Shown here piece after piece: positions 9,945 through 29,891 of a DNA stretch of 35,102 nucleotides. The notes under the pieces were generated by a model. It ran no database searches, was not told the DNA's origin, and was given only the letters and a program-made list of their open reading frames with translations. The translations under genes were made by a program, and so were the position numbers. Source of the stretch: Macrostomum lignano (lineage: Eukaryota); assembly GCA_002269645.1 (NCBI GenBank), contig NIVC01004781.1:1-35102 (forward strand), written 5' to 3'. How positions within the stretch are numbered: position 1 is the first letter of the stretch; each line of letters begins with the position of its first letter.

Positions 9945-10345
9945 AGTCAGGGGCGCTGTACAACCCAAGTAAGCGTGTGTATGTTTAGTGTGTGCACCCT
10001 GGTGCACTTTAATAAGCGACATAACAAGTAACACAACCGGCGAGAGGCATTGCTGCCCATTCTGCCGACTCCCCTGAGCAGGCACACAAGCGCGCGGATA
10101 CGTACGCAGCCATACGCACAGGCACACACTCACACAGGAGTGTACAGCGGCCCTAACTTTTTTTATCGTTAGGCATGTACACCTCACTGTGCCTTGGAAG
10201 GTTGGCCCTCCAGGCCGCTAATTGCACGAGCAGAGCTGCAGCCGAGATTCCAATTCAGCCCCAAATTAATGTGACTGCACTTGGAATCGAGCCTGGGCCG
10301 CTGGCATATCAGAGCGCCGCGATAGACCATTATGCTCAGGACAGG
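9945..10345 (-). mobile_element. tRNA-derived SINE-like dispersed repeat, copy 1
   Basis: Minus-strand head AGCATAATGG...CGGCGCTCTGATATGCCAGCGGCCCAGGCTCGATTCC has A/B-box-like motifs and resembles tRNA-Glu. The body is shared with copies at 17.2 kb and 19.8 kb. Confidence 0.75.
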
Positions 10346-11274
10346 AGTCCGTGGAATGAGCAGAATTACCTCAGCGCTGGTTTTTTGACTTAATTAAAGC
10401 ATTTTACTGTTAAATATCCTCTCGACTTAATGCGTCGCCCTCTGGTCTACAACGTTAACTTCGAAAATTGTCGCAACTTGTTCAGAGAGTCCAGTTGCAA
10501 GAATTGGCATTTATGAAAGAAATGAGATTAACTGACGGGACATTTAATGGGCTTTTAATCCCCTTTTGATCATGGGAGGAGGCAAGGAGGCGGGATCCCT
10601 TTGAGTAGGGGGTGGGATTTTCACAGCGGGTTGGCTGGCAATGCCCTGTCTCATCTAATGAGCTCTAAGTGGAGTATTAATTAACTACATATATATAAGT
10701 ATCTCTCTAGAGGTTAGGCTCGTAATAGCGGACTTAACGGCCTTCCACTCCTATATGCTACGTGTAATCACCAAAGTTTAAGCGAGGTCAAGCGTGTACA
10801 AATGAATGTCAGACACACGCCTCATTAGATTCTCTACAGCGAATTGTCGACTCAAGAGTTCCCTCAATAGCTGGTCTCCATGCCGAACATTGAAACGGAC
10901 TCAAAGTTTCTCAAGCCTACTACTAAATCACAAGAAATGAGCAAAAAAGCTCAACAGGCCACTTACTTATGCTGTACAAAATCTTCAACCTAAATTTTAG
11001 TTACTAAGCAATTTACTAATAAATGCTCAATTAGATCATCTAAATAAAATAACAACTCAACGAGTTCAAATTAGGACAGTTAGGATTTGAAAATACTCTA
11101 CAGAGCAAAACAAATTCACTTTCAATTGAAATTCTATATTTTTAACTGATTGACACATATTATACATATAAATGCACTCTCAAGATGAAATACTAAGCTG
11201 TAAACAGGAGATCCGTTTATTACAATAATAACTCAGACATTAAGCAACCAATTAGAAAATCAACAAAAAGACAA

Positions 11275-12037
11275 ATCACCTGTATTTACAGACAGAAATC
11301 TGTATTTACAGACACAAACAGTCTGTATTTACAGACACAAACAGTCTGTATTTACAGAAACAAACAGCCTGTATTTACAGACACAAACAGTCTGTATTTA
11401 CAGAAACAAACAGCCTGTATTTACAGACACAAACAGCCTGTATTTACAGACACAAACAGCCTGTATTTACAGACACAAACAGCCTGTATTTACAGAAACA
11501 AACAGCCTGTATTTACAGACACAAACAGCTTGTATTTACAGACACAGACAGCCTGTATTTACAGACACAGCCTGTATTTACAGACACAAACAGCCCGTAT
11601 TTACAGACACAGACAGCCTGTATTTACAGACACAGACAGCCTGTATTTACAGACACAAACAGCCTGTATTTACAGACACAGACAGCTTGTATTTACAGAC
11701 ACAAACAGCCTGTATTTACAGACACAGACAGCCTGTATTTACAGACACAGACAGCCTGTATTTACAGACTCAAACAGCCTGTATTTACAGACACAGTCTG
11801 TATTTACAGACACAGTCTGTATTTACAGACACAGACAGCCTGTATTTACAGACACAAACAGTCTGTATTTACAGACACAAACAGCCTGTATTTACAGACA
11901 CAAACAGCCTGTATTTACAGACACAAACAGCCTGTATTTACAGACACAAACAGCCTGTATTTACAGACTCAAACAGCCTGTATTTACAGACTCAAACAGC
12001 CTGTATTTACAGACACAGACAGCCTGTATTTACAGAC
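11275..12037. repeat. 23-bp minisatellite TGTATTTACAGACACAAACAGCC directly 3' of the FAM20B stop
   Basis: About 30 tandem units. Confidence 0.97.
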
Positions 12038-12053
12038 CCCAATACCCACAGCG

Positions 12054-12257
12054 TCACAGTGTTAGCCTGGCATCGTCAGACACCAGCACAGCGGCAGGCC
12101 CCAGTCTCCTGTTGCATTTGTCCAGCTCGCGCAGCACCCGATCCAGCCGCCTGTCCAGAGCCGCGGAGTGCTCGAGCGTCAGGAGCGGCCCGCTCGACGG
12201 CAGGCTGGAGGCGCCAGACCGGCACAGGGCGGCCTGGGTGGCGGCGCCGAGCAGACC
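12054..12257 (-). CDS. FAM20B: FAM20B-like terminal exon 5
   Basis: Phase-0 cccAG acceptor. Reads GLLGAATQAALC...LLTLEHSAALDRRLDRVLRELDKCNRRLGPAAVLVSDDARLTL*, matching the FAM20 C-terminal pattern H..A.D.RL..V...C. Not in the ORF track. Confidence 0.9.
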   Translation of the reverse strand, partial: GLLGAATQAALCRSGASSLPSSGPLLTLEHSAALDRRLDRVLRELDKCNRRLGPAAVLVSDDARLTL

Positions 12258-12297
12258 CTGGGATTGGATGGTGGGGGAGTTAGAGTGGACACATTAG

Positions 12298-13035
12298 TAG
12301 TCTACCTGTCCATTAGACTGGATAATCTACCTGTCCATTAGACTGGATAATCTACCTGTCCGTTAGACTGGATAATCTTCCTGTCCATTAGACTGGATAA
12401 TTTACCTGTCCACTACTAGACTGGATAATCTACCTGTCCATTAGACTGGATAATCTACCTGTCCATTAGACTGGATAATCTACCTGTCCATTAGACTGGA
12501 TAATCTACCTGTCCATTAGACTGGATAATCTACCTGTCCGTTAGACTGGATAATCTTCCTGTCCATTAGACTGGATAATTTACCTGTCCACTACTAGACT
12601 GGATAATCTACGTGTCCACTACTAGACTGGATAATCTACCTGTCCATTAGACTGGATAATCTACGTGTCCACTACTAGACTGGATAATCTACGTGTCCAC
12701 TACTAGACTGGATAATCTACGTGTCCACTAGAGACTGGATAATCTACCTGTCCACTACTAGACTGGATAATCTACCTGTCCATTAGACTGGATAATCTAC
12801 CTGTCCATTAGACTGGATAATCTACCTGTCCATTAGACTGGATAATCTACCTGTCCACTACAGAATGGATAATCTACCTGTCCACTACTAGACTGGATAA
12901 TGTACCTGTCCACTACAGACTGGATAATCTACCTGTCAACTACTAGACTGCCAGACTGAATAATCTACCTGTCCACTACAGACTGGATAATCTACCTGAC
13001 CACTAGACTGGATGGATAATCCACCTGTCCATCAG
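12298..13035. repeat. 25-28-bp minisatellite CTGGATAATCTACCTGTCCA(TT/CTACT)AGA, FAM20B intron 4
   Basis: Tandem units fill nearly the whole intron. Confidence 0.97.
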
Positions 13036-13112
13036 TCAATGCAGTTCCAAATCAAGCACTCATCTCACACCCAAGCCCACGTGGATTAAATTCCTCATTT
13101 CCCAAGTCTCAC

Positions 13113-13449
13113 CTGCAGCGCCAGCAACCTGCTATTGGTGCTGGTCCGCAGCCTACAGCACTGCTGCAGAGGCGCCAGAATGCTGAGCTCATCGTGATAC
13201 GGATTCCCCAAGCCTTTGCCATTGTCCAGCGTGACAACCAGCTGCTGTCCACCAATACCGGCCGCTGTCTCAAACTCGTGCCTATCAGCGTTGCCCAATA
13301 GAAAGTCTAATATCGAGGTGTCAATCAGATCAAGCAGAACGCCAGGACCCAACCGACTTAATAGCTGTGAATTGCAGGGATTCTCGCCCAGTTGCCAAGC
13401 CGCCTTGGCATCGTTCGAGGCGTAGTTCCTGGCCCAGGGGTGCCTGTGC
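13113..13449 (-). CDS. FAM20B: FAM20B-like exon 4 (catalytic segment)
   Basis: HRHPWARNY...LLDLIDTSILDFLLGNADRHEFE...LDNGKGLGNPYHDELSILAPLQQCC keeps the DRH catalytic Asp and the DN metal-binding Asp. tttccAG and GTGAGA boundaries are phase-consistent. Confidence 0.96.
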
Positions 13450-13539
13450 CTGGAAATCACGTGTTCGGGTCGGGATTGTTTGTACTTTTTTTAGTACCGT
13501 ACTTTAAAGTTGCGACAGTTAAAGTTCGCGTCATCTCCC

Positions 13540-14470
13540 TACGGACATTTGGCGCCATCGCCCTCCACAGACATTTGGCGCCATTGCCCTCCCCCCAGAT
13601 ATTTGGCGCCATAGCCTCCCTCCAGATATTTGGCGCCATAGCCTCCCTCCAGATATTTTGCGCCATAGCCTCCCTCCAGATATTTTGCGCCATCGCCCAT
13701 CCCAAGACATTTGGCGCCATTTCCCCCTCAAGACATTTGCCGCCAACTCCCCCAAAGATTTGGCGCCATAGCCCCCTCCAGATATTTGGCGCCATCGCCC
13801 ATCCCAAGACATTTGGCGCCATTTCCCCCTCAAGACATTTGCCGCCAACTCCCCCAAAGATTTGGCGCCATAGCCCCCTCCAGATATTTGGCGCCATCGC
13901 CCATCCCAAGACATTTGGCGCCATTTCCCCCTCAAGACATTTGCCGCCAACTCCAAAGATTTGGCGCCATAGCCTCCCTCCAGATATTTGGCGCCATTTT
14001 CCCCCTCAAGACATTGCCGCCAATTCCCCCAAAGATTTGGCGCCATCGCCCATCCCAAGACATTTGGCGCCATTTCCCCTCAAGACATTTGCCGCCAACT
14101 CCCCCTAAGATTTGGCGCCATCGCCCCCTCCAGATATTTGGCGCCATCGCCCATCCCAAGACATTTGGCGCCATTTCCCCCTCAAGACATTTGCCGCCAA
14201 CTCCCCCAGATATTTGGCGCCATCGCCCCCCTCCAGATATTTGGCGCCATCGCCCATCCCAAGACATTTGGCGCCATTTCCCCTCAAGACATTTGCCGCC
14301 AACTCCCCCTAAGATTTGGCGCCATCGCCCCCCTCCAGATATTTGGCGCCATTTCCCCCTCAAGACATTTGCCGCCAACTCCCCAAAGATCGTCGATTTG
14401 GCGTCATTGCCCCACCCCAAAAGTTTGGCGCCATCACCCCCAGACCAGATTCAAGAAATTTGGCGCCACC
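13540..14470. repeat. Composite TTTGGCGCCA-core minisatellite (23-27 bp subunits, ~100 bp higher-order unit), intron 3
   Basis: Recurring subunits such as ATTTGGCGCCATCGCCCATCCCAAGAC and ATTTGCCGCCAACTCCCCCAAAG. Confidence 0.95.
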
Positions 14471-14473
14471 AAC

Positions 14474-14752
14474 CTTTTCAGAGCCAGTCGATGCGGCAGC
14501 ATCAGAACGGCGACGCCTTCAAGAACTTCGTCAGGGCCGGCGCAGACCCCGGTGCGTCGGCCAGTGCAGTAGCGACAGACGCCCCACAGACAGAGCCGGT
14601 TGTCGCTCAGGCGACGATAGAAAGTCTCTCTGAGGCGAGGCGTGGCCGCCAGCGACGCTGCGGTCAGGTTTAGCAGCCGAGGCGACGCCACGGGACCGCG
14701 GTGGAAGCCCAGAAGGCGGCCAAGGTGGTAGCCAACGACCTCGGCATTGTCT
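14474..14752 (-). CDS. FAM20B: FAM20B-like exon 3
   Basis: (R)DNAEVVGYHLGRLLGF...CLWGVCRYC...VCAGPDEVLEGVAVLMLP matches FAM20B HNAEVAAFHLDRILGF...CFYGKCYYC. Phase 2 at both ends; GTTGGT donor. Confidence 0.93.
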
Positions 14753-14779
14753 CTGCAGGGGGGCGGGCGGGCTTTGAGG

Positions 14780-15490
14780 GTGACCTGACGATCCTGAACG
14801 TAACCTGACAATCCTGAGGGCAACCTGAAGATTCTGAGGGTAAACTGAAGATCCTGAGGGCAACCTGAAGATCCTGAGGGTAAACTGAAGATCCTGAGGG
14901 CAACCTGAAGATCCTGAGGGTAAACTGAAGATCCTGAGGGTAAACTGAAGATCCTGAGGGTAACCTGACGATCCTGAAGGGTAACCTGACAATATTGAGG
15001 GTAACCTGACAATTCTGAGGGTAATCTGACAGTTCTGAGGGTAACCTGAAAATTATGGGGTAACCTGACAATATTGAGGGTAACCTGACAATTCTGAGGG
15101 TAATCTGACAGTTCTGAGGGTAACCTGACAATTCTGAGGGTAACCTGACAATTCTGAGGGTAATCTGACAGTTCTGAGGGTAACCTGACAATTCTGAGGT
15201 AACCTGACAATTCTGAGGGTAACCTGACAATTCTGAGGGTAACCTGACAATTCTGAGGGTAACCTGACAATTCTGAGGGTAACCTGACAATTCTGAGGGT
15301 AACCTGACAGTTCTGAGGGTAACCTGACAATTCTGAGGGTAACCTGACAATTCTGAGGTAACCTGACAATTCTGAGGTAACCTGACAATTCTGAGGGTAA
15401 CCTGACAATTCTGAGAGTAACCTGACAATTCTGAGGGTAACCTGACAATTCTGAGGGTAACCTGACAGTTCTGAGGGTAACCTGACGATT
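14780..15490. repeat. 20-bp minisatellite GAGGGTAACCTGACAATTCT, intron 2
   Basis: About 35 tandem units. Confidence 0.97.
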
Positions 15491-15679
15491 TTAATGGAAT
15501 CTGAGTGTCATATGTGAGTCTAAGAAGTCAGCAGGGTGTCTAGACCTCAAAAACAACTAAGAATCCAAAGACTTTTAGGACACAAACATTGCTTAGAATT
15601 CAATAAGGTGTCAGATCTCAACCCAAGCTCAAGACAATGATGATGCCAGCTCTAGAAAAAGCACCCCTTTATCACGCAC

Positions 15680-15930
15680 CTGTCCCTGCCGGCCACAACG
15701 CTCCCAGTCATCACCCGATCGCGGTCGTAGACGCGTGGCTTAAAAACCACAGATGCGCCACCGGTTCCAGCATCCAGTTGGAGTAGCAGCTTCATCTGAC
15801 TGCCAGCTGGAAACTCTGAGACCAACGAGACGGCAGCTTGGCCTGTCAGCCGTTCCAGCTGAGATAGAATTCGCTGACTGGCGTTGCTAGGCAACAAGCG
15901 ACGCTCTTTGTTGTTAGCGGCGAACGAACT
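15680..15930 (-). CDS. FAM20B: FAM20B-like exon 2
   Basis: Phase-0 ttttcccAG acceptor. AGSQMKLLLQLD...VVFKPRVYDRDRVMTGSVVAGRDR matches GTQLK...VVFKPKRYSRDHVVEG..YAGYDR, the FAM20B-specific pattern. Confidence 0.93.
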
Positions 15931-15979
15931 CTGGGAAAATTGGGGTGTTCCAGTTTATGGGTGAGACTACTGTAGCTTA

Positions 15980-17110
15980 ATTAAGTGGCGCCAAGGAGAG
16001 TCTTCTAGTGGCGCCAATTTGAGTCTTCTAGTGGCGCCAAGTTGAGTCCTCTAGTGGCGCCAAGGTGAGTCCTATAGTGGCGCTAAGTTGGGTCTTATAG
16101 TGACGCCAAAGTTTCTTAAAGTGGCGTCAAGTTGAGTCTTATAGTGGCGCCAAAGTTTCTTATAGTGGCGCCAAGTTGAGTCATCTAATGGCGCCAAAGT
16201 TTCTTAAAGTGGCGCTAAGTTGAGTATTCTAGTGGCGCCAAGGTGAGTCCTATAGTGGCGATAAGGTAGGTCTTACAGTGGCGCCAAGTTGTGTCTTATA
16301 TTGGCGCCAAAGTTTCTTTAAGTGGCGCTAAGGTGAGCCTTATAGTGACGCCAAGTTGAGTCTTCTAGTCGCGCTAAGGTGGGTCTTATAGTGGCGCCAA
16401 GTTGTGTCTTATAGTGGCGCCAAAGTTTCTTAAAGTGGCGCCAATGTGAGTCTTATAGTGGCGCCAAGGTGGGTCTTATAGTGGCGCCAAGTTGAGTCAT
16501 CTAGTGGCGCCAAAGTTTCCTAAAGTGGCGCTAAGTTGAGTCTTCTAGTGGCGCCAAGGTGAGTCCTATAGTGGCGCTAAGGTAGGTCTTACAGTGGCGC
16601 CAAGTTGTGTCTTATAGTGACGCCAAAGTTTCCTAAAGTGGCGCCAAGTTGAGTCATCAAATGGCGCCAAAGTTTCTTAAAGTGGCGCTAAGTTGAGTAT
16701 TCTAGTGGCGCCAAGGTGAGTCCTATAGTGGCGATAAGGTAGGTCTTACAGTGGCGCCAAGTTGTGTCTTATATTGGCGCCAAAGTTTCTTTAAGTGGCG
16801 CTAAGGTGAGCCTTATAGTGACGCCAAGTTGAGTCTTCTAGTGGCGCCAAGGTGGGTCTTATAGTGGCGCCAAAGTTTCTTAGTGGCGCCAAGGTGAGTC
16901 TTATAGTGGCGCCAAGGTGGGTCTTATAGTGGCGCCAAAGTTTCTTAAAGTGGCGCTAAGTTGAGTCTTCTAGTGGCGCCAAGGTGAGTCCTATAGTGGC
17001 GCTAAGGTAGGTCTTACAGTGGCGCCAAGTTGTGTCTTATAGTGGCGCCAAAGTTTCTTTAAGTGGCGCCAAGGTGGGTCTTCAAGTGGCACTAAAGTGT
17101 CTTATAGTGG
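15980..17110. repeat. ~23-bp minisatellite TAGTGGCGCCAAG(T/G)TGAGTCTT(C/A) with ~473 bp higher-order duplication, intron 1
   Basis: Variant block starting GCGATAAGG at 16258 recurs at 16731. Confidence 0.95.
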
Positions 17111-17224
17111 CGTCCAGGTGAGACTTACGGAGGGTTGAATTATGATAGGAACCATTTCTTTGAAAAATCCTTGAAGGCCGACCAATTAGGCGTCCTAATT
17201 TAGTCGTCATTGCAGTCAATATAG

Positions 17225-17600
17225 ATAGGCGCTCTGATGTGCCAGCGGCCCAGGCTCGATTCCAATTTGCAGTCACATTAATTTGGGTCTAAATTGGAAT
17301 CTCGGCTTGGCTCTGCTCGTGCAATTAACGACTAGTTTGAGGGCCAACCCCCAAGACACAGTGAAGTGTACATGCCTAACGATAAATAAAGTTAAAGCCT
17401 CTGTACACTTCTGTGTGAGTGTGTGCCTGTGCGTATGACTGCGTACGTATCTGCGCGCTTGTGTGCCTGCTCAGGGGAGTCGGCGGAATGGGCAGTAATG
17501 CCTCTCGCTGGTTGTGTGACAATGTCGCTTATTAAAGTGCACCAGGGTGCGCTCATACACACGCTCATACAGCATGTACAGCAGCCCAAACTTTCTAATC
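17225..17600 (+). mobile_element. tRNA-derived SINE-like repeat, copy 2 (inverted relative to copies 1 and 3)
   Basis: GGCGCTCTGATGTGCCAGCGGCCCAGGCTCGATTCC head, with a body collinear with the reverse complement of copy 1. Confidence 0.78.
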
Positions 17601-17646
17601 GTCAGGCAAGAGTCAGACTCATTTACCATGCAAAGTGAGACCTCAC

Positions 17647-18099
17647 CATAGCAACATAGCTATCGTGCAGTCCAGCCTCCAGAGCAAATCCTTTATTAAA
17701 GTTACTACTATTAGTAGTAGTAGCGTAGAGCTCCGCAGGCGGCCAGCCGGCATCCAGCAGATCCCGGATGCGCAGCTCCTGGTCGCTGTTAGCCGGCCGG
17801 AAATCCGGCAGCCCCTCGTGGCCCCGGTGCTCATACAACCGATTGGACTGCAGTCGCCAAGCAATATGAGCAGACTGGCCTAGACTATGCGATTCGCGAT
17901 CGTGCTTAGCAACTAAACTGGCGTCGTTAGCAACCGAGGCGGGCAGTTGACTCAAGTTGAGCACAGTCAGACAGGCGAAGACCAATAGCGCGGCCAATGC
18001 GTAAGCCAATAAGCGGCGATTGAAGCCGGAGATGCGGCGTCTCGGAGGCTGGAGATGTCGAAGATGACAGATAACTGTTTGAGGAAACCGAGCTCCAAG
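17647..18099 (-). CDS. FAM20B: FAM20B-like exon 1: basic tail, signal anchor and stem; no in-frame ATG upstream of the anchor
   Basis: Open frame from phase-0 acceptors at 18099 (ttttacAG) or 18048 (catctccAG): PPRRRISGFNRRLLAYALAALLVFACLTVLNL... Phase-0 GTGAGG donor at 17646 fits exon 2. Confidence 0.8.
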
Positions 18100-18216
18100 C
18101 TGTAAAATCTAAGAGCTACTTTAACCTAGAAAAGTAAACTAGAGTAGTTTTTTACGAGCGTAATTAATTTATCAGGTGGCTACAATGGACACAATGGATG
18201 GTAAGACTTAACCACC

Positions 18217-19038
18217 AATTTGGTGCCTCAGACAGGATTGAAGCGTCAATTTGGCGCCTCAGACAGGATTGAAGCGTCAATTTGGTGCATCAGACAGAAT
18301 TTAAGCGTCAATTTGGCGCCTCAGACAGGATTGAAGCGTCAATTTGGCGCCTCAGACAGGATTGAAGCGTCAATTTGGTGCATCAGACAGAATTTAAGCG
18401 TCAATTTGGCGCCTCAGACAGGATTGAAGCGTCAATTTGGCGCCTCAGACAGGATTAAAGCGTCAATTTGGTGCATCAGACAGAATTTAAGCGTCAATTT
18501 GGCGCCTCAGACAGGATTGAAGCGTCAATTTGGCGCCTCAGACAGGATTGAAGCGTCAATTTGGTGCATCAGACAGAATTTAAGCGTCAATTTGGCGCCT
18601 CAGACAGGATTGAAGCGTCAATTTGGCGCCTCAGACAGGATTGAAGCGTCAATTTGGTGCATCAGACAGAATTTAAGCGTCAATTTGGCGCCTCAGACAG
18701 GATTTAAGCGCCTATGTGGCGCCTCAGACAGGATTGAAGCGCCTATTTGGTGCCTCAGACAGGACTTTAGGCGCCGATTTGGCGCCTCAGACAGGATTTA
18801 AGCGCCTATTTGGTGCCTGAGACAGAATTTAAGCGCCTATTTGGTGCCTGAGACAGGATTTAAGCGCTAATTTGGCGCCTCAGACAGGACTTTAAGCGCC
18901 AATTTGGCGCCTCAGACAGGATTTAAGCGCCTATTTGGTGCCTGAGACAGAATTGAAGCGCCTATTTGGTGCCTGAGACAGAATTGAAGCGCCTATTTGG
19001 TGCCTGAGACAGGATTTAAGCGCCTATTTGGCGCCTCA
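18217..19038. repeat. 31-bp minisatellite TTTGGCGCCTCAGACAGGATTGAAGCGTCAA with 93-bp trimeric higher-order unit
   Basis: Every third unit is the variant GGTGCATCAGACAGAATTTAAG over 18220-18700. Confidence 0.97.
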
Positions 19039-19784: not shown

Positions 19785-20085
19785 CAAGCGACATTGTCAC
19801 ACAACCGGCGAGAGGCATTCCTCCCCACTCTGCCGACTCCCCTGAGCAGGCACACAAGCGCGCGGATACGTACGCAGTCATAGGCACAGGCACACACTCA
19901 CACAGGAGTGTACAGCGGTCCTAACTTTAATTATCGTTAGGCATGTACACTTCACTGCGCCTTGGGGGTTGGCCCTCAAGACTGTTAATTGCACGAGAAG
20001 AGCCAAGCCGAGATTCCAATTCAGCCCCAGATTAATGTGACTGCACTTGGAATCGAGCCTGGGATGCTGGCACATCAGAGACTAC
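19785..20085 (-). mobile_element. tRNA-derived SINE-like repeat, copy 3 (truncated)
   Basis: ACAACCGGCGAGAGGCATT...GGAATCGAGCCTGGG is nearly identical to 10033-10300. Confidence 0.8.
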
Positions 20086-20504
20086 GCCCCCATCGACATG
20101 TCTACCCTAACCTAGACACACACTATTGATACAAACAACCCAGCTGAAATTTCATGCTCTGAATGTTCAACTAGAAATCAGATACTTACAATAAATACAT
20201 CTAAATAAGGAGCTGTTGCGAAGCCTAAAAATGACTAATAATTAAAATTGTAAAACAAAGACAAGAAAAAAGTCAGACTGCTATGCAATAATTAGTTTTT
20301 TTGTTTCCAAAATTTTGCTTAACACACGAGCCAGAGCCATTGAGTTGTTGGTTTTCTTTTATTTGGAGTTGTTGGAGAACAACGAACCAGAAAAAAAGGA
20401 TTTATGGAATTGTTATTTAGAATGGGCTCCTTCAGACTTATTGCACAAGGTCAGATCACGTAGCTCTTGTCCTCCATAGTTAGCTGATCCGGTTAGCCCA
20501 GCCT

Positions 20505-21056
20505 TCAGAACACCATAGCATGCGGCCGCTGCCCAGACTTGATGCTGAACAAAGATCGCAGATAAGAGCGCAGCATCGGGCCATCACCGCTGGCCTTGAT
20601 CGCGCCCATCAGCGCCTTGTCAACGGCTGCCTGATCTTCCCGACGCTCAGCCGACACAGCGTAGGCGGCGTCCGACTTTGCGAAGATGTCGGCGCTGCCG
20701 CCAGCCGAGGCGGCCGACTTCTTAGCCGAACGCTGGCGACGGAAATAGGCGTCGTTAAGTCGCTCGGGCAGAGCGACCTTGCTGATGTCGATGCGAGTTT
20801 TAGTGCCGATTACGTAGCGTTGACTGACGCGGCGGAGAGGGCAGCCGTTAAGCTTGCGGGGTCCCGTGACCAGCAGCAGGCCGCTCTCGAGCTGCTTGAG
20901 CAGCACAACGCGCTTGCCCTTGTGCCGGCCAGCTAGCAGGATTAGGACGGCGCCAGGCGCCAGGTTGGAGCGAATACGGCGCACGTGTTTCTTGAAGGTC
21001 TTCTTCGGGCGTAGCTGAACCTTGCGGCTGGCCACCTGAGTGGGCAGCGACTTCGG
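20505..21056 (-). CDS. RPL6: 60S ribosomal protein L6 (eL6), last exon
   Basis: PGAVLILLAGRHKGKRVVLLKQLESGLLLVTGP..LNGCPLRRVSQRYVIGTKTRIDIS is the L6e KOW-domain signature. Phase-0 tttgcAG acceptor. Confidence 0.98.
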   Translation of the reverse strand, partial: PKSLPTQVASRKVQLRPKKTFKKHVRRIRSNLAPGAVLILLAGRHKGKRVVLLKQLESGLLLVTGPRKLNGCPLRRVSQRYVIGTKTRIDISKVALPERLNDAYFRRQRSAKKSAASAGGSADIFAKSDAAYAVSAERREDQAAVDKALMGAIKASGDGPMLRSYLRSLFSIKSGQRPHAMVF

Positions 21057-21069
21057 CTGCAAATCAGTG

Positions 21070-21755
21070 GGGACGACAGGATTAGTGTTTGGGGTGAGAG
21101 GATTAGTGTTTGGGGTGAGAGGATTAGTGTTTGGGGTGAGAGGATTAGTCTTTGGGGTGAGAGGATTAGTGTTTGGGGTAACAGGATTAGTGCTTGGGTT
21201 AGAGGATTACTGTTTGGGGTGAGAGGATTAGTCTTTGGTGTAACAGGATTAGTGTTTAAATGACAGGATTAGTTTTTGGGGTGAGAGGATTAGTGTTTGG
21301 GGTGAGAGGATTAGTGTTTGGGGTGGCAGGATTAGTCTTTGGGGTAACAGGATTAGTGTTTAAATGACAGGATTAGTTTTTGGGGTGAGAGGATTAGTGT
21401 TTGAGGTGAGAGGATTACTGTTTGGGGTGAGAGGATTAGTCTTTGGTGTAACAGGATTAGTGTTTAAATGACAGGATTAGTTTTTGGGGTGAGAGGATTA
21501 GTGTTTGGGGTGAGAGGATTAGTCTTTGGTGTAACAGGATTAGTGTTTAAATGACAGGATTAGTTTTTGGGGTGAGAGGATTAGTGTTTGAGGTGAGAGG
21601 ATTACTGTTTGGGGTGAGAGGATTAGTCTTTGGGGTAACAGGATTAGTGTTTAAATGACAGGATTAGTTTTTGGGGTGAGAGGATTAGAGTCTGGGGCGA
21701 GAGGATTAGTGTTTGGGGTGAGAGGATTAGAGTCTGGGGTGACAGAATTAGTCTT
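21070..21755. repeat. 21-bp minisatellite TTTGGGGTGAGAGGATTAGTG filling the RPL6 intron
   Basis: About 30 tandem units. Confidence 0.96.
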
Positions 21756-21861
21756 TAAGGGGACAAGCAGGGTGCCTGGCTTACGAGTAGAGGGCTTAGG
21801 GTTGCTAAAAACTCTCATACTTCCCACTGCAGCCTGCAGTTCACACATACAAAGCACTCAC

Positions 21862-22089
21862 CGTCTTCTTGTACACCTTCCTCTCTCCGCCATTCTTATC
21901 GCCGCCAATTTTCTTAACAACAAAAGCGGCGGCGGCGGCTTTCTCGGCCGATTTCTTGGCCGGAGTCTTAACCTTCTTAACCTTGTACGCGGCCTTGCGT
22001 TGGAAAATTCTGGCCCGAGAATATTTCATCAGCCTACTGGCGTTAATAGCCGAGTTCTTGGGCTTGTGGGGAGCGCTGCTCTTGGCCAT
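21862..22089 (-). CDS. RPL6: RPL6 first coding exon
   Basis: tgcAG|CAA ATG GCC. MAKSSAPHKPKNS...KYSRARIFQRKAAYK...VVKKIGGDKNGGERKV is the L6e N-terminus. Phase-0 GTGAGT donor at 21861. Confidence 0.96.
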
Positions 22090-23039
22090 TTGCTGCAATG
22101 TAGCATGGGTTAAACAGGTTTAGAAAATTCATTTTCGAATGAGTTACAGAGAGAAACTAAGATTTATAGCCAAATATATAAGCGGAGGAAAATTAAAAAA
22201 AGGATATAAACCTTAATCGGGCAGTTTCAAAGGACCGAGGGCCGGTTACGGTTAGAGAGGCTTATGCCCGCGGGCCGACCCCTGCTCTAGGTGACAAAAT
22301 ATCACGGCACAAGTCGCCGAAAAGTCGTCGAAGACTCAATTCAAGATGGTTTACTGTTTGCGACTCTTGGGGCTGTAGAGCCACTGAGTTGCATCTAAAG
22401 CGCAATTGCGTCACTTTATAAATCAGAATCGCATTCTGTGTTTATAAAACAACGATATTTTGTCTACTCAAGTTCTCGTATTACGAGTAGAAAGTTAAGC
22501 GCTAAAACATCGACTCTTGGGACGACTTCTTTTTGCGACTCTTTAAGATTCTACAGCTCGCGTGATGCGCTTTGTGACTTTGAGTTTACAGTAAACACCA
22601 GCAAGTTTAAGGACAGCTGTTATCCATTAATAAATAAACATTTGCTTAGACAAACAGTTTTTTCGTGCAAGGAAGAGAATGAATAGTTAATAGGTGTGTA
22701 AGCGTAAGGGAATTTATATTAGGTTAGCAATCCAAATAGCCAAGGAAGAACAACGTGAACTATAAAATGGATTGTGCAAGGAAGATGAGGAAAATAATTT
22801 TATCTAGATCAAATTCACGTACTTTGCCTTGCGGCTTTTTCTGCGCTTTAGGAGCCATTGGCGTATTTTACTAAACTGTATGTCTCAAACTTTACTCAAT
22901 ATAATATTATTAGGGAAAATTATTGCAAGCTACTGCAAGTAGCAAGATGAGGGCACTAGCAGAAATACAAAAAATGCACCGGGTTTTTATCAATCATTTG
23001 AAAGCCAGCATAAAATGCTGATTAAACTGATTAAATTGA

Positions 23040-23787: not shown

Positions 23788-24132
23788 TCAAGCAGCCTGA
23801 TCGTAGTAGCGAAATGTGGGCAACAGGGGCAGCCGGTTATCCTTAGACTGGTAGCGCCCGTGCAGCAGCCACTGGTGAAACTCGGCAGTTGCGTTACATT
23901 CGTACACGGGGAATTCCACCAGCTCGCGCGGAGTCTCCCACGAGCCGAGGATCAGCCGGCCGAACCTGTCAAATATTGCCCGGCGCTGTCTGAGGTGAAC
24001 GCGCACAGTGGCTTGAACAAATTGCAGATCTCGACCGATTTCTTGTTTAGCAAATTTCATTATCTTCGGCTCGCTGACTACTGACAGTAGTTCGAAGCGG
24101 TACGACCGGTTTAGAATGTCGTCCGTCATGCA
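23788..24132 (-). CDS. MRPL45: MRPL45 (mL45, Tim44-like) last exon
   Basis: VQATVRVHLRQRRAIFDRFGRLILGSWETPRELVEFPVYE matches [25 protein letters not shown]...PKDVLEYVVFE. Phase-0 ttttccAG acceptor; AATAAA at 23595-23590. Confidence 0.93.
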   Translation of the reverse strand, partial: CMTDDILNRSYRFELLSVVSEPKIMKFAKQEIGRDLQFVQATVRVHLRQRRAIFDRFGRLILGSWETPRELVEFPVYECNATAEFHQWLLHGRYQSKDNRLPLLPTFRYYDQAA

Positions 24133-24169
24133 CTGGAAAAATTGATAGGAGAAAATGGTGGGAAGCTGG

Positions 24170-24660
24170 GATCAACTGAGGATCTGGGAGGCTGAGTGGC
24201 AAAGCAACTGAGGATTTGGGAGGCTGGTCCTGCCCAGCAACTGAGAATCTGTGAGGCTGGCCCAGAAACTGAGGATCTGTGAGGTTGACCCAGAAACTGA
24301 GGATCTGAGGCTGGCCCAGCAACTGAGGATATGTGAGGCTGGTGGCCTAGCAACTGAGGATATGGGAGGCTGGTGGCCTAGCAACTGAGGATATGGGAGG
24401 CTGGTGGCCCAGCAACTGAGGATATGGGAGGCTGGCCCAGCAACTGAGGATCTGTGAGGCTGGTGGCCTAGCAACTGAGGATATGGGAGGCTGGCCCAGC
24501 AACTGAGGATCTGGGAGGCTGGCCCAGCAACTGAGGATCTGGGAGGCTGGCCCAGCAACTGAGGATCTGGGAAGCTGGTGTCCCAGCAACTGAGGATCTG
24601 GGAGGCTGGCCCAGCAACTGTGGATCTGGGAGGCTGGCCCGGCAAATAAGGATTTGGGAG
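24170..24660. repeat. Same 28-bp minisatellite family (plus 31-bp GGCTGGTGG variants) in MRPL45 intron 2
   Basis: Unit shared with 23040-23520, same orientation. Confidence 0.95.
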
Positions 24661-24718
24661 GTTTAGCAAAGCTCTTAAGCAAAAATTAACAAGAAAGCAT
24701 TCAATTATCGATTTATAC

Positions 24719-24776
24719 CTTGAATCCTCGCGGTGTCAAATGATTTTCAAGTAGATTTTCGGCATTCTTATTAAGA
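24719..24776 (-). CDS. MRPL45: MRPL45 58-nt internal exon (not in ORF track)
   Basis: atttcAG and GTATAA boundaries; phase 2 in, phase 0 out, exactly bridging the neighbouring exons. Reads (D)LNKNAENLLENHLTPRGFK. Confidence 0.82.
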
Positions 24777-24872
24777 CTGAAATGTGTTGAGATTGATATC
24801 AGTTCAAGATGAATAACACAGAAGTTTTAGCAAAAAAAGGAAACAATACGGCAGCAGAGCCGATATACTCAC

Positions 24873-25375
24873 TCCTGCAGCTGCTCATTAACAGACACAT
24901 AGTCATCCTGCAACAGGCGGGCCAGCTCCTCCTTGCCACCGCTAGGAATCAGATCATTATTCTTCAATAGATTCTCCGCCTCTCTATGCGAACTTTTCGG
25001 CTTCTTCTGGTCCCAGAGTCTGGCGGTTTTATTCACCAGACTGCGCAGGCCGCTGCCCTCTACAGCGTCAGCTTCTTCCATTGGTTCGAAGATCCGATCG
25101 GATGACCGATGGAACAGGCTGCCGTGCAGGAATGGCAGAGTCTGTATCTGACTGTGCGACTGCATCAGTTTAATTCGATCTGGCATACTGCGCTGCCGGC
25201 CGAATTCATCTTCAAACCAAACGCTGGGCCGATTGCGCAGCTCCGGCCCGAATTCGTGCACTCTTAATTGGCGAATTATTTTAAAGCGCGGATGCCACGG
25301 CTTGTGGCGAGCGTAGCGGACTGGCTGGAAGCCTAGCAGGATTCGGCCGCAGCCAATACAGGAGGAGGCTGAGGC
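24873..25375 (-). CDS. MRPL45: MRPL45 first coding exon; begins at a phase-0 acceptor with no ATG
   Basis: ctaac branch site and aacttgcAG|GCC TCA GCC. Reads ASASSCIGCGRILLGFQPVRYARHKPWHPRFK...; GTGAGT donor at 24872. Confidence 0.88.
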
Positions 25376-27840
25376 CTGCAAGTTAAACGAACAGGTAGTT
25401 AGGTCAGGTATCAAAAAGGGTATTTATTACAATAGGTGTATATTTAGAGATTTCATTTAGTTGCTATCTTGGCAATTTTACATCTCAAGGTTTTTAATTC
25501 ATTGAATTCCAATAATTCAGAACAAAAACTTAATTGTAACAAACCTAGATTGACTAGAGGCCAATTAAACTAAAAACTATTGGACTACAGTCTTGAAATT
25601 GCATTTGAAAAAAGTAATAGGTTTTTACCTCAGAATTATATGTTGCACTAACTTTATTTTGTAAAGTATTTTATAAGCCAAGTTATTAATGCATATACTT
25701 TCAATGCTTTTGTTTTCAATAAATGTATGCAATTTATTGTATAAATATACTATTACATTAGACTTTCTGGCACTAAAATGCAAAATTGCATCTAAGGTCT
25801 AATTTCAAGATGCGATTTGAAGTCACATTGTTATATAACTCCCCTATTCATGAATGCATAACACCCAGCTAAGCTAGCCAATCTGACTTAGCCAAGGTAA
25901 ATTGCAAAAATGCCCACCCAAAAATTACTACTATTAAACAAAACAATGAAAATTTTTGTTTAAATTATTTAAATCATTGTTATAAATTATTTAAATCATT
26001 GTTTAAATTATTAAACAATGAAATGTGGAAGCAGATGGATATTACCAATTTTTGTCCAATTTTTATATTGGATAAAGCTGCTCACCAAATATTGGGTACA
26101 TTGTCTAATTAAATAAAGGTCAATATCAGCAGTAAGTATTAGATATTTATTTGATTTGCCTATGCATTTTGTCACATCTTAGATATCTTCAAGGTCAAAA
26201 TTTATTTGAACCAAACAAAATGTATCAGCAACTCAAATAATTAACTAATACTTAATGTTGATATTGACCTTTATTTATCTACTCTTCATTAAGCGAGCCA
26301 CTTTACCTGATTTCTACATTGTCTAATTATTTTAGTTTTTTTGTCCAAATCTCAATCAATTTCTTGTCCATTTCCAATCTAGATAAGAAATGATAAGAAA
26401 AATGTATAATCTTTCATCTAGTCTATCTAAATTGCAGTAAAAAATTGAATGCAAGGCATTTGAAACAAACAAAAAATGGCTTGCAAGGTAAAATGCACAA
26501 ATTTAAGCTATACAAATGCTTTCCCTTTTATTTGCTCTTGTTTGAGGAAGATGTGCTATAGCAGCTTTGGCAAATGTAAGATGACATTAAAATCAGCAGT
26601 TATCTTAGCACTTATCTATTCTATTGAGGGTTTATTGTGATCTAGATTATAATAGAAGGCAACATTAGATGTCAAAATCAATAGACAAATGAGATAGAAG
26701 TGCATGATATTCCTATTTACTTTCTTACATCTGCAAATGTTTCAAATATTACTAAGCTTAAAAGTGAGAATGAGTTGTAACATATGTTGTACAACCTACT
26801 TTACTCAAGATGATCAGCATATAGACTTATATCCTAGTAAACTATAGTCTCCTAGAGGCCATTCCATGGAAAATTCCAGCATGCAAGAGCCTTTGGTATC
26901 CAGTGTATGGCATGTATTGCATATAAGACAAGAAGACTAAGCAAATTTAGACTAAACAAAGTGTAAATACATAATTTTTTTGCAATGATTTAACAAATTT
27001 TAAAGAAGTGGCAAACCTATTTTTGCAAAATTTTGAAGCTTAACATTTTATTTTTTTATAAATATAATACAAAGATATAAGTATGAATTTAAGTCAGTAA
27101 ATTAAAAGTTCATATTCTAATAGACTTTTTGTTTTGATTGATGTTTCATAAAATCATCACTCAGTTTCAAAATATACTCTTTCTTGCTGTTTAGAGGTTA
27201 ACCCATAGCCTGGATCATGCTGGGTGCTCACCCAAAGAAAAATTGAATATAGAAAAATGCATGCCAAAAATGTAGTATATGCCTATTCTAAAAAATATAC
27301 TGGTCATGCATTTTTGCAGCTTACCTTGGCTGGGCCCTTGCCAGCCAGCTGGATCGACTTGGTGTTACATCTGGATGATCAATATAAGGACAAAACAAGC
27401 TTAATTATGGTGTAAGGATTAAAATTCTATATGTGGCATATTTTTATTTTGAGAATAAAAGAAAAACTATAATTAGTTATATTTTTTAAAGGACTAATGC
27501 AAAATAATCTACAAGAAAAATGCTAAAAATGACATATAAAGAATGAAAATCCATTGAATAGTTCAAAAGTTATGTTAATTATAACTTGGAAAATCAGACC
27601 TTTTGAGCAAAAAATGATCACATTGCTTTATGGGAAAATTGCATTATGAAAGTATAAAAAAATATGACACTAAAAGTACTTTTTTATTACTTGACCAAAA
27701 TTCAAAAGTGAGGTGTCTTTTTACTCATACAAATAAGATCTATTATACTACATAGTTAAAAATAAGAAATTTAGAAGTTTATAAAAATCTCACTGGACCT
27801 CCTACTACCATGTGACTCTGGTCTCTGGGTCATTTGCAAA

Positions 27841-28436
27841 AGGCAGTGCTTATCCCCACGGTACCATAGGAATAATTTCTGTCTTATCCCAACGGTACCG
27901 TGCGAATAATTTTCTGCTTATCCGCATGGCACACTGAGGAGATAGCTGCCCTATCTTCTACATATGCCGTGCAAATAATTTTCTGCTTATCCGCACGGCA
28001 CACTGACGAGATAGCTGCCCTACATGTCCTCTGTTTTATTCCCTCTGCTTTACTAGCTGCCCTATCTGCTACATATATATGCTGTGCTGTGCGTGAATAG
28101 TTTATAGCTTATTGAAAGGGAATTTGAACTGAGGATACTAAGAAGCTGTTGATCTTGATGTAAAAACTCGAATAAGTTCTAGACTAGTATATGCATGTGT
28201 AAATGCGTGTTATTCTGCTTTACTGATACCCTTCTGTATACTTATTCAACAATAATTCCACAAAGTTGTTCTATTGCACTCAAATCGTATGTACTAAACT
28301 TCCCACACGGCATATATAGAAGATAGGGCAGCTATCTCGTCAGTGTGCCATGCGGATAAGCAGAAAATTATTCGCACGGTACCGTTGGAATAAGACAGAA
28401 ATTATTCCTACGGTACCGTGGGGATAAGCACTGCCT
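27841..28436. mobile_element. Non-autonomous foldback/MITE-like element with ~130 bp terminal inverted repeats
   Basis: AGGCAGTGCTTATCCCCACGGTACC...TATCTTCTA.ATATGCCGTG at left and its near-perfect reverse complement at 28306-28436. Internal ~57 bp subterminal duplication; no ORF. Confidence 0.85.
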
Positions 28437-29891
28437 ATGCAAAAAGCTTTATTTAGGGTAGTCTAGTCTTAAAAAGCTAGTCTAGACTTGGATTTTGTAT
28501 GCAGAAACACAAAGTTGAACTGGTCTGCTATAGACAGAACTAAGGTAGCTAGACCATAGACTATAGACTGAACTACCCAAGTCCGGACTAACTAGTCTGG
28601 ACTAACCTTTCTGCATACAGCTGTCTGTCAGCACTTTTATACCTTGGTATATCCTCCCTATAGAAAATTTACCTTGGTGTATCCCCCAATAGGAAATGTC
28701 TGGCTATGCCCCTGCAACTTATTCCAATAAGGCAATTTCATTAATTTAAAATATATATGGCCACTAATATAAGCTAAGTAAAATTTATAGTCTAACTACT
28801 TAAATAGTAGCAACAAAGTAAAAAAGCATTTTATAGTACTTTTATAATGATTAGATGCACTTGACTATAGTCTTTGAGAACCATTTAAAAGCAATTCTTG
28901 TTTAATTATTTTTTACTTAAAAACAGCTTTTATTTTTCAACAAGGGTTGACAAAAAGAGCAACTAAGTTGCAATGCAAAACAAAAGGATCAGGAAAGTTG
29001 CAACAAAAGCAACAAAGTCGCAAAAGGAGCAAACTAAGATACGAAAGAAATTTCTGCTTTAACGCAAACCAGTTACAGCCAAGAAGCCACGTTGGAACTT
29101 GCACATTAAAGGCAAATTGAGACGAAGACTACATATTTGATTGGCGAATACAACCAATCTACATCCTAAATTTTGCGAGTGTAAAACAACATATTTTAAT
29201 GTTTAAATTTTATCATTTTTAACAAAACTTTTTTTTATTAAACATTTTGTTTAAGAAGAAGGTAAGCAAACTGTTTATAAAGCAGAAAACTATTTAAAAA
29301 ACATTATAATAAGATTTTACACTTAAATACTATAATGGCTTTGCTTAAACGAATAACTAAATATATACATTGTAAATAAGCAACGTAAATAATTATAATA
29401 GCAATCGAATGATCCAGGAATATTCTACCGCCGGACTATTCGTCTGCCCTGATTAAATGCAGTGGACTATTCGTCTGCCGGTGCTAAATAGTGAAGACGC
29501 TTTGGTGTTGCAGATTTGCAGACTGATTCCTGCTCTCGGAACTCAACTCGATCGGTTTTCATCTACGGTGTGGACGCACTCAATCGTCTTCTGCTTGAGA
29601 CTGACCAGGAGTCCCCCGTTTCCCTCCCTAGCGTCAACTGCTATTACAGTATCCATGCATCGAGATCTTTTTACTTGCCAATTCCTCTGAATGTGCAGGT
29701 TGGACATGCAGCTCCGAGTTATAATAGATTTATCGTAAAACGATCCAAATGCAACCCAAAAAATCGTTTTTGTCCTATTTGCATGTACATGTATAATTAA
29801 AGTCGTACTTCATGTATACGAGCTAACAAAATTTAACTATAAATGCGACTTCAGGGCTTATATAAGAGCGTAGAGCTGATTATAGCTACTA

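What the first reader, a model, noticed from the sequence alone, without database searches (positions are those of the whole stretch)
17647..18110. FAM20B signal anchor has no ATG; two phase-0 acceptors fit SL-donated AUG
Seen: no ATG in any frame on the minus strand from 18120 to the hydrophobic anchor, and the first in-frame ATG (17649) would delete the Golgi anchor. Both candidate acceptors (18099, 18048) are in phase 0. The second gives MPPRRRISGFNRRLLAYALAALLVF, a textbook type II membrane N-terminus. This is a second independent case in the window, and alternative acceptor use could change cytoplasmic tail length.
Basis: partly seen in the sequence, partly recalled or inferred. Interest (0 to 1): 0.8.

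Follow-up and report, generated by a model that had tools for sequence, protein, structure and literature searches.

The report
Flatworm FAM20B start codon from spliced leader
This flatworm (Macrostomum lignano) Golgi kinase gene has no start codon of its own and almost certainly borrows the AUG at the end of the trans-spliced leader RNA, a mechanism already known in flatworms, so it is a correct but fairly ordinary example.

Summary
The window is the whole 35,102-bp scaffold NIVC01004781.1 of Macrostomum lignano. On the minus strand the FAM20B-like first exon (18048-17647) is open from the stop TAG at 18111-18109. No ATG occurs in any frame from 18289 to 17835. The first in-frame ATG (17649) is the last codon of exon 1, after the signal anchor. 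Only two AGs nearby fit the published trans-splice acceptor motif, and both are in phase 0 (first exon bases 18099 and 18048). The M. lignano spliced leader (SL) is 35 nt and ends in ATG. Use of that AUG as initiator is documented in schistosomes and noted for Macrostomum. GenBank lists the protein as "partial". An independent UniProt model starts exactly at 18048 (PPRRR...). In a paralogous copy the AG of both putative trans-acceptors reads TG, as in the SL, while all 8 cis-acceptors are intact. That assembly was polished with RNA-seq, so I read this as an imprint of SL-bearing reads. No read-level evidence was reachable. I conclude that SL trans-splicing at 18048 most likely gives MPPRRRISGF... 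Use of 18099 is possible but has no support. This is a new member of a known kind, of low to moderate interest.

The parts
18049..18054 (-). Proximal trans-splice acceptor CTCCAG (AG = 18050-18049). The first exon base, 18048, is in phase 0.
   Evidence: it matches [T/C]TNCAG. UniProt A0A1I8HKK1 starts exactly here. In paralog L001 the A is replaced by T, as in the SL ...ATG.
18100..18105 (-). Distal candidate acceptor TTACAG (AG = 18101-18100). The first exon base, 18099, is in phase 0. Use of this site would add LGARFPQTVICHLRHLQ to the cytoplasmic tail.
   Evidence: it matches the motif and is conserved in all three copies. No annotation or other evidence shows that it is used.
18109..18111 (-). 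In-frame stop TAG that closes the reading frame upstream of both acceptors.
17647..18048 (-). FAM20B-like exon 1: 402 nt, 134 codons, with no ATG until its last codon.
   Evidence: Exact spliced mapping of P0001. ATG positions.
17956..18012 (-). Signal anchor LLAYALAALLVFACLTVLN (residues 14-32 of the SL-initiated protein), preceded by the Arg-rich tail PPRRRISGFNRR.
   Evidence: Hydropathy scan.
17647..17649 (-). First genomic in-frame ATG. It is the last codon of exon 1, and the GT donor follows at 17646-17645. Initiation here would drop the anchor.
12054..15930 (-). Remaining FAM20B-like exons: 15930-15680, 14752-14474, 13449-13113 and 12257-12054 (stop TGA at 12056-12054). All have CAG acceptors and GT donors.
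   Evidence: Pfam Fam20C 2.4e-50. Best solved-structure match is the FAM20B xylosylkinase 5xom, 1.9e-62.
18040..18042 (-). Downstream GAG at 18043-18041 (the AG is 18042-18041). The first base after it, 18040, is in phase 1. The GenBank partial CDS starts at 18039.
   Evidence: It is a poor acceptor (G at -3, no motif). The SL AUG would be out of frame here and give a 38-codon ORF.
18216..19038 (.). Array of a 31-nt tandem repeat (26.5 copies) in the upstream region (outron or intergenic).
   Evidence: There are about 6 copies in L001 and none in L003.
20505..22858 (-). Upstream same-strand gene for ribosomal protein eL6 (RPL6). It has its own ATG (22858-22856) and stop TGA (20507-20505). AATAAA lies at 20363. 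A weak cryptic donor ATG|GTGTTC sits at 20514/20513.
23788..25375 (-). Second Met-less gene (mitochondrial ribosomal protein-like). Acceptor CTTGCAG| with first exon base 25375 in phase 0, giving M+ASASSCIGCG...
   Evidence: Three GenBank copies are all 'partial'. The UniProt models start at the acceptor.

Best explanation
The FAM20B-like gene of Macrostomum lignano (GenBank BOX15_Mlig004525g2) encodes no initiator codon for its full-length product. Its pre-mRNA is trans-spliced to the 35-nt spliced leader CGGTCTCTTACTGCGAAGACTCAATTTATTGCATG, most probably at the acceptor CTCCAG| so that base 18048 follows the SL. The SL's only ATG is its last three bases. It then lies in frame, and translation starts there. 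The product is MPPRRRISGFNRR-LLAYALAALLVFACLTVLN..., a type II Golgi signal-anchor protein with a FAM20 kinase domain. Shown here: the sequence anatomy, the species, the SL sequence, the family assignment, and the fact that two independent annotations find no upstream coding exon. Inferred: that the SL is joined at 18048, and that the SL AUG is the codon used.
For: Species and scaffold: the window is NIVC01004781.1 of M. lignano.

SL: it ends in ATG and carries no other ATG. The published acceptor motif [T/C]TNCAG is matched only by 18099 and 18048, both in phase 0.

No genomic start: there is no ATG in any frame for 456 nt, and the first in-frame ATG comes after the anchor.

Annotations: GenBank proteins PAA46599.1 and PAA69322.1 are flagged 'partial'. 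UniProt A0A1I8HKK1, from the independent ML2 annotation, begins PPRRR at 18048 and maps exactly onto 5 canonical exons.

Parallel case: the neighbouring gene shows the same pattern. Its UniProt models begin exactly at its CAG| acceptor, and three GenBank copies are partial.

SL-like bases in a paralog: in copy L001 both putative trans-acceptors are changed towards the SL 3' end (CCAG->CCTG and TTGCAG->TGCATG). All 8 cis-acceptor AGs are intact (2/2 versus 0/8, Fisher 1/45). The third copy, L003, keeps CAG at both. The assembly was polished with Pilon using RNA-seq as well as DNA reads (PMC5730564). SL-bearing reads crossing these exact junctions are therefore a natural source of the change.

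Precedent: the flatworm SL AUG serves as initiator methionine (Cheng et al. 2006). Wiberg et al. 2023 call the Macrostomum SL ATG the likely start codon.
Against: No SL-containing read or cDNA for this gene could be inspected.

The GenBank CDS starts at 18039, 9 nt after the acceptor and 1 nt after a GAG| site. A junction at 18040 would put the SL AUG out of frame. I read this start as a coverage-limited 5' end, because the neighbouring gene's three copies start at +0, +9 and +15 from their acceptor.

Two ML2 models (A0A1I8J7E8, A0A1I8G4B0) join the last RPL6 exon in frame to 18048.

The change in L001 could be a real mutation rather than a polishing artefact.
Confidence: 0.8

Rival explanations
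1. The SL-donated AUG is used, but the main or an alternative junction is the distal acceptor at 18099. The tail would then be 17 residues longer (MLGARFPQTVICHLRHLQPPRRR...). In the paralog that has lost the proximal AG, this would be the only in-frame option.
For: 18099 matches the motif (TTACAG), is in phase 0, is conserved in all three copies, and the 51 nt between the two sites is open. L001 reads CTG at the proximal site. Multiple trans-splice sites per transcript are reported for M. lignano.
Against: No annotation starts at 18099. The ML2 model starts at 18048. The ML2 model of the L001-type copy (P0020, which carries the N and I variants) also splices at the proximal site, which suggests the AG is intact in that assembly. 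The open 17 codons are expected by chance 44% of the time.
Confidence: 0.12
2. A cis-spliced upstream exon supplies the ATG. It would be either the last RPL6 exon, through the donor ATG|GTGTTC at 20514/20513, or an unannotated 5' exon such as 20075-19902.
For: ML2 models A0A1I8J7E8 and A0A1I8G4B0 encode ...GQRPHAM|PPRRRISGF. One candidate exon in phase 0 with an ATG and a GTGAGT donor lies at 20075-19902 and is conserved in L001.
Against: The donor GTGTTC is weak compared with the GT[G/A]AG consensus. The fused models start mid-gene (LQQMAKSS), and one of them translates intronic minisatellite sequence, as ab initio artefacts do. An ab initio predictor cannot start a gene that has no ATG, so fusing it to the upstream gene is the expected error. 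A 260-residue cytosolic ribosomal protein placed ahead of a signal anchor makes little biological sense. The 20075-19902 candidate lies inside an interspersed repeat that is also present at 10031-10314 and 17232-17530. The RNA-seq-based GenBank annotation has no such exon.
Confidence: 0.06
3. The mRNA is not trans-spliced in frame and starts at a non-AUG codon. Alternatively, the locus is a 5'-truncated, non-functional copy.
For: In-frame near-cognate codons exist (ATT 18108, ATC 18072 and 18033, TTG 18009). The GenBank start at 18039 follows a GAG.
Against: All three genomic copies keep an intact five-exon ORF with an identical or nearly identical protein. The anchor-encoding region is preserved. 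A ready in-frame AUG is available from the SL. Nothing in the sequence specifically favours non-AUG initiation.
Confidence: 0.03

Closest known systems
Flatworm SL 3'-terminal AUG used as translation initiator methionine (Schistosoma mansoni; Cheng, Cohen, Ndegwa & Davis 2006, J Biol Chem 281:733)
   Same: The SL ends in AUG. The acceptor is in phase 0. The recipient ORF has no AUG of its own that could give the full-length protein. The N-terminal targeting signal depends on the donated Met.
   Different: The species is different (the free-living macrostomorph M. lignano, with a single 35-nt SL). For this gene, neither the SL junction nor initiation at the SL AUG has been shown experimentally.
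M. lignano SL trans-splicing as annotated by Wudarski et al. 2017 and Ustyantsev & Berezikov 2021
   Same: It has the same acceptor motif [T/C]TNCAG. It is a conserved (human-homologous) gene, the class reported to be enriched among trans-spliced genes. It lies on the same strand downstream of another gene.
   Different: The distance to the upstream gene is 2,456 nt, or about 1.3 kb after subtracting repeats. This exceeds their 1-kb operon threshold. The GenBank 5' end is 9 nt inside the exon, so this gene's SL site is not visibly annotated in the data I could reach.
FAM20B glycosaminoglycan xylosylkinase (e.g. Hydra FAM20B, PDB 5xom/5xoo)
   Same: It has a Fam20C-type kinase domain and its best solved-structure match is FAM20B. 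It has a short basic cytoplasmic tail followed by a single N-terminal hydrophobic anchor.
   Different: At 491 residues it has a longer stem region than the roughly 400-residue vertebrate FAM20B. Its activity is untested.
slORFs (SL-created ORFs; slORFfinder, Song et al. 2023)
   Same: The ORF is defined only after the SL is added.
   Different: That work concerns mostly near-cognate or alternative ORFs in nematodes, tunicates and trypanosomes. Here the SL AUG starts the canonical, conserved protein.

Membership tests
SL-AUG-initiated flatworm mRNA | The organism has an SL RNA whose exon ends in AUG. | tested here: met
   The window is M. lignano scaffold NIVC01004781.1. The published SL CGGTCTCTTACTGCGAAGACTCAATTTATTGCATG has its single ATG at positions 33-35.
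SL-AUG-initiated flatworm mRNA | The first coding exon begins at a 3' splice acceptor that fits the trans-splice motif. | tested here: met
   CTCCAG|18048 and TTACAG|18099 both fit [T/C]TNCAG. They are the only 2 of 11 AGs nearby that do.
SL-AUG-initiated flatworm mRNA | The acceptor is in phase 0, so the SL AUG is in frame with the conserved ORF. | tested here: met
SL-AUG-initiated flatworm mRNA | No genomic in-frame AUG can give the full-length protein. | tested here: met
   The stop at 18111-18109 is followed by no in-frame ATG until 17649, which lies after the anchor.
SL-AUG-initiated flatworm mRNA | No upstream cis-spliced coding exon exists. | tested here: inconclusive
   GenBank and one ML2 model have none. 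Two ML2 models fuse RPL6 to this exon through a weak donor. One repeat-borne candidate exon exists.
SL-AUG-initiated flatworm mRNA | The SL sequence is physically present on the mRNA at this junction. | not testable with these tools
   The evidence is only indirect. The ML2 model's 5' end lies at the acceptor. SL-like bases occur at both trans-junctions of paralog L001, in an assembly polished with RNA-seq.
SL-AUG-initiated flatworm mRNA | Translation initiates at the SL AUG. | not testable with these tools
   This needs Ribo-seq, N-terminal proteomics or reporter assays.
FAM20B (glycosaminoglycan xylosylkinase) | A Fam20 kinase domain is present. | tested here: met
   Pfam PF06702, E = 2.4e-50, covering positions 6-214 of 218.
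FAM20B (glycosaminoglycan xylosylkinase) | The protein is closer to FAM20B than to FAM20C or FAM20A. | tested here: met
   PDB phmmer gives FAM20B 5xom 214.6 bits, FAM20C 169.7 and 165.3 bits, and FAM20A 137.7 bits. No phylogeny was made.
FAM20B (glycosaminoglycan xylosylkinase) | Type II N-terminal signal anchor. | tested here: met
   Hydrophobic residues 14-32 follow an Arg-rich tail. This is a hydropathy scan only, not a dedicated topology predictor.
FAM20B (glycosaminoglycan xylosylkinase) | Xylose 2-O-kinase activity. | not testable with these tools
   This needs a biochemical assay.
Downstream gene of an M. lignano operon | Same-strand upstream gene within 1 kb after subtracting repeats (Ustyantsev & Berezikov 2021). 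| tested here: not met
   The RPL6 stop at 20505 is 2,456 nt from the acceptor at 18048. Subtracting the 823-nt array and a repeat of about 295 nt leaves about 1.3 kb. The distance is 1,826 nt in L001 and 1,583 nt in L003.

The most novel reading that the evidence does not exclude
The AG-to-TG changes in the paralog on NIVC01001332.1 are real and not polishing artefacts. That FAM20B copy would then have lost the proximal acceptor and would have to use the distal phase-0 acceptor. The paralogs would make Golgi kinases with cytoplasmic tails of 13 and 30 residues, both started by the SL AUG. The neighbouring gene's paralog would have converted its SL-donated AUG into a genomically encoded ATG at the identical position (TTGCAG->TGCATG). 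That would be a snapshot of how SL-AUG-dependent genes gain or lose a genomic start codon.
Probability: 0.1. Interest if true: 0.55.

Novelty: new member of a known kind. Interest (0 to 1): 0.3.

Why it matters
The practical value is for annotation. GenBank lists this protein and its neighbour as 'partial', and an older annotation fuses it to ribosomal protein eL6. Both errors follow from ignoring the SL-donated AUG. Recognising the mechanism gives the complete protein with its Golgi anchor. It also shows that genome-only gene finding will systematically mis-model such genes in flatworms. The biology itself was described in 2006 for schistosomes and is acknowledged for Macrostomum, so the mechanism is no surprise to a specialist. 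The side observation could interest users of the Mlig_3_7 assembly: RNA-seq polishing may have written SL bases over trans-splice acceptors.

Tried and rejected
1. Rfam (gathering thresholds) and a tRNA scan of the window found nothing.
2. No SL RNA gene or SL-like sequence beyond chance is present in the window. The motif TTGCATG|GTAAA in intron 1 (17633-17622) resembles the SL exon/intron boundary but scores within the shuffle range.
3. A protein search with exon 1 alone returned nothing, not even the identical UniProt entry, so it says nothing about transcript-derived N-termini.
5. Gene identifiers were not found in the literature or in supplements.
6. I first thought the GenBank partial CDS starts were offset by a systematic +9 nt from the trans-acceptors. 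The third copy of the neighbouring gene starts at +15 and the second at +0, so I rejected this. The starts look like coverage-limited 5' ends, because reads were mapped end-to-end.
7. I rejected operon membership with RPL6 using the published 1-kb criterion.
8. The 456-nt ATG-free stretch is not significant on its own against the window-wide distribution of such gaps.

Full report
**What the window is**

The window is eukaryotic. It has many intronic minisatellite arrays, no tRNA genes and no Rfam matches. A protein search with the concatenated conserved ORF pieces found Macrostomum lignano Fam20C-domain proteins. Cluster members include GenBank PAA46599.1, "BOX15_Mlig004525g2, partial", on a contig of exactly 35,102 bp. 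The encoding-contig look-up then identified the window as scaffold NIVC01004781.1 of assembly GCA_002269645.1 (Mlig_3_7).

Three genes are annotated, all on the minus strand:
- a mitochondrial-ribosomal-protein-like gene (CDS 25366-23788)
- ribosomal protein eL6/RPL6 (22858-20505)
- the FAM20 gene (18039-12054)

**Checking the observation**

Every element of the finding is correct.
- No ATG occurs in any frame on the minus strand between 18289 and 17835.
- The frame is closed by TAG at 18111-18109 and then stays open.
- The first in-frame ATG is 17649-17647, the last codon before the GT donor at 17646.
- AGs at 18101-18100 and 18050-18049 give first exon bases 18099 and 18048. They are 51 nt apart and both are in phase 0.
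- I listed all 11 AGs between 18200 and 18000. Only these two match the published M. lignano trans-splice acceptor motif [T/C]TNCAG (motif from PMC8629364).
- With a Met in front, the 18048 product has an Arg-rich 13-residue tail. A 19-residue hydrophobic segment follows (residues 14-32, mean hydropathy 2.3).

The statistics alone are modest. Two motif sites both falling in phase 0 has a chance of 1/9. An open 17-codon interval has a chance of 0.44. ATG-free gaps of this size occur elsewhere in this repeat-rich window.

**Gene identity and structure**

UniProt A0A1I8HKK1 (P0001) maps exactly onto five exons with canonical GT/CAG sites: 18048-17647, 15930-15680, 14752-14474, 13449-13113 and 12257-12054. 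Pfam gives Fam20C at 2.4e-50. Against solved structures, the best match is FAM20B glycosaminoglycan xylosylkinase (5xom, 1.9e-62, 214.6 bits). FAM20C follows at 169.7 bits and FAM20A at 137.7 bits. The name "FAM20B" is reasonable, although I made no phylogeny.

**Why an SL-donated AUG is the best explanation**

- The SL. M. lignano has one SL, CGGTCTCTTACTGCGAAGACTCAATTTATTGCATG. About 30% of its genes are trans-spliced to it, with conserved genes enriched among them. Its only ATG is its last three bases.
- The precedent. All flatworm SLs end in AUG. Cheng et al. 2006 showed its use as initiator methionine in S. mansoni, where more than 40 cDNAs require it (as summarised). Wiberg et al. 2023 state that the Macrostomum SL's final ATG is the likely translation start.
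- Two independent annotations found no upstream coding exon. The GenBank proteins of two copies are "partial". The ML2-based UniProt model starts with PPRRR, exactly at 18048.
- The neighbouring gene behaves the same way. Its first exon begins at CTTGCAG|GCC (25375, phase 0) without an ATG. Its first internal Met is 64 residues in. All three GenBank copies are partial. Both UniProt models start at ASASSC, exactly at the acceptor.

**An unexpected indirect line of evidence**

The genome holds at least three collinear copies of this locus: the window, L001 (NIVC01001332.1) and L003 (NIVC01000890.1). They are 93-97% identical.

In L001 the proximal FAM20 acceptor reads CCTG|CCT instead of CCAG|CCT. 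The neighbouring gene's acceptor reads TGCATG|GCC instead of TTGCAG|GCC. Both changes destroy the AG and copy the SL's terminal ...(GC)ATG. L003 keeps CAG at both sites.

As a control, I checked the cis-acceptors of the three genes. All 8 cis-acceptor AGs are intact in L001. The contrast is 2/2 against 0/8, a Fisher probability of 1/45.

The Mlig_3_7 methods state that the assembly was polished with Pilon using Illumina DNA reads and RNA-seq reads mapped by STAR. The simplest reading is that SL-bearing RNA reads overlapping these exact junctions were written into the consensus. That would be indirect evidence for SL junctions at the positions equivalent to 18048 and 25375.

Two further points fit this reading:
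- The ML2 models of the L001-type copies (P0020 and P0027, recognised by their variant residues) behave as if the AG were intact there and no genomic ATG were present.
- L001 has an AG that explains the +FSQ acceptor variant seen in the GenBank proteins, while the window has AA at that site. This suggests that the assembled transcripts derive mainly from the L001 copy.

This whole line is inference. A real mutation is not excluded.

**Evidence that cuts the other way**

The GenBank CDS starts at 18039, 9 nt inside the exon and 1 nt after a GAG. An SL junction at 18040 would put the SL AUG out of frame and give a 38-codon ORF. I do not think this is a junction, for three reasons:
- GAG is a poor acceptor.
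- RNA-seq was mapped end-to-end, so SL-bearing reads are lost and 5' ends of weakly expressed genes are set by coverage.
- The three copies of the neighbouring gene start at +0, +9 and +15 from their acceptor.

Two ML2 models (A0A1I8J7E8, A0A1I8G4B0) read ...GQRPHAM|PPRRR. They splice from ATG|GTGTTC, two codons before the RPL6 stop (20514/20513), to 18048. However, the donor is weak. The models begin mid-gene, and one of them translates intronic repeat sequence. Fusion to the upstream gene is also the expected failure of an ab initio predictor faced with a gene that has no ATG. RPL6 has its own AATAAA at 20363.

A scan of the 2.4-kb upstream region found one other candidate exon in phase 0 with an ATG (20075-19902, donor GTGAGT). 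It lies inside an interspersed repeat that occurs three times in the window.

**Which acceptor**

The evidence (ML2 model start, L001 change) points to 18048. The site at 18099 is a good motif match and is conserved in all copies, but nothing shows that it is used. The suggested regulation of tail length remains speculation.

**Operon question**

The distance from the RPL6 stop to 18048 is 2,456 nt, or about 1.3 kb after removing the 823-nt array and a repeat of about 295 nt. It is 1,826 nt in L001 and 1,583 nt in L003. All of these exceed the published 1-kb criterion, so I do not class the gene as an operon member. Read-through from RPL6 is not excluded.

**Comparison with what is known, and verdict**

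This works like the SL-AUG-initiated mRNAs described for schistosomes. The sequence-level membership criteria are met. The two experimental criteria, SL on the mRNA and initiation at the SL AUG, could not be tested here.

It is a new, well-characterised example of a known mechanism in a species where that mechanism is already assumed. Its interest is mainly for annotation. My confidence that the initiator Met comes from the SL is about 0.8. My confidence that the junction is at 18048 is about 0.65-0.7.

Noticed in passing
window 25375 (minus strand); gene 25375-23788: The upstream gene is named a mitochondrial 39S ribosomal protein (L39 or L50) in UniProt. Its only Pfam hit is a weak, sub-threshold match to MBA1 (E = 0.0021). 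It also lacks a start codon. Its exon 1 begins at CTTGCAG|GCC in phase 0, giving M+ASASSCIGCGRILLGFQPVRYARHK..., which looks like a presequence. The first internal Met is residue 64. All three GenBank copies are 'partial', and the UniProt models start exactly at the acceptor.
   Followed up: yes
L001 9990-9991 and 1805-1811 (about NIVC01001332.1:115,475-115,476 and 107,290-107,296): In this paralogous copy both putative trans-splice acceptors have AG replaced by TG, matching the SL 3' end. All 8 cis acceptors are intact. The assembly was Pilon-polished with RNA-seq, so this is probably an imprint of SL-bearing reads. If it is systematic, it would corrupt trans-acceptors across Mlig_3_7.
   Followed up: partly
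window 20512-20516 to 18048: UniProt models A0A1I8J7E8 (771 aa) and A0A1I8G4B0 (745 aa) fuse ribosomal protein eL6 to FAM20B through the weak donor ATG|GTGTTC. This is probably an ab initio artefact caused by the missing start codon.
   Followed up: partly
window 15931-15939: GenBank PAA46599.1 contains three extra residues (FSQ). In this scaffold that needs a non-canonical AA acceptor. The paralog L001 has AG there (G instead of A at -10 of the main acceptor), which makes a tandem acceptor 9 nt apart. The window's model appears to have been transferred from the other copy's transcript.
   Followed up: partly
window 22093-22098 (RPL6 exon 2 acceptor ATTGCAG|CAAATGG, first exon base 22092): The ML2 RPL6 models start with LQQMAKSS, 6 nt upstream of the exon 2 acceptor, and lack exon 1. 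The acceptor is in phase 0, and its ATTGCAG resembles the SL end ATTGCATG. An alternative SL-trans-spliced RPL6 isoform (MQMAKSS...) with a partly aligned SL would explain these models.
   Followed up: no
window 18216-19038; also 15984-17127, 14775-15490, 13537-14377, 12301-13013, 11271-12037: Nearly every intron and the upstream region of the FAM20B gene hold long minisatellite arrays (units of 20-31 nt). The 31-nt upstream array has 26.5 copies here, about 6 in L001 and none in L003, so its copy number changes rapidly between paralogs.
   Followed up: partly
window 10031-10314, 17232-17530, 19786-20080: An interspersed repeat of about 300 bp is present three times, in both orientations. It lies within and around the FAM20B gene and also occurs in L001. 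The copy at 19786-20080 contains the only candidate upstream ATG exon.
   Followed up: no
window 25000-32000: A long AT-rich block (GC 30-39%, against about 45-55% elsewhere) with short 34-nt repeats near 27847 and 28356. I did not examine it. It may be a transposon or another insertion.
   Followed up: no
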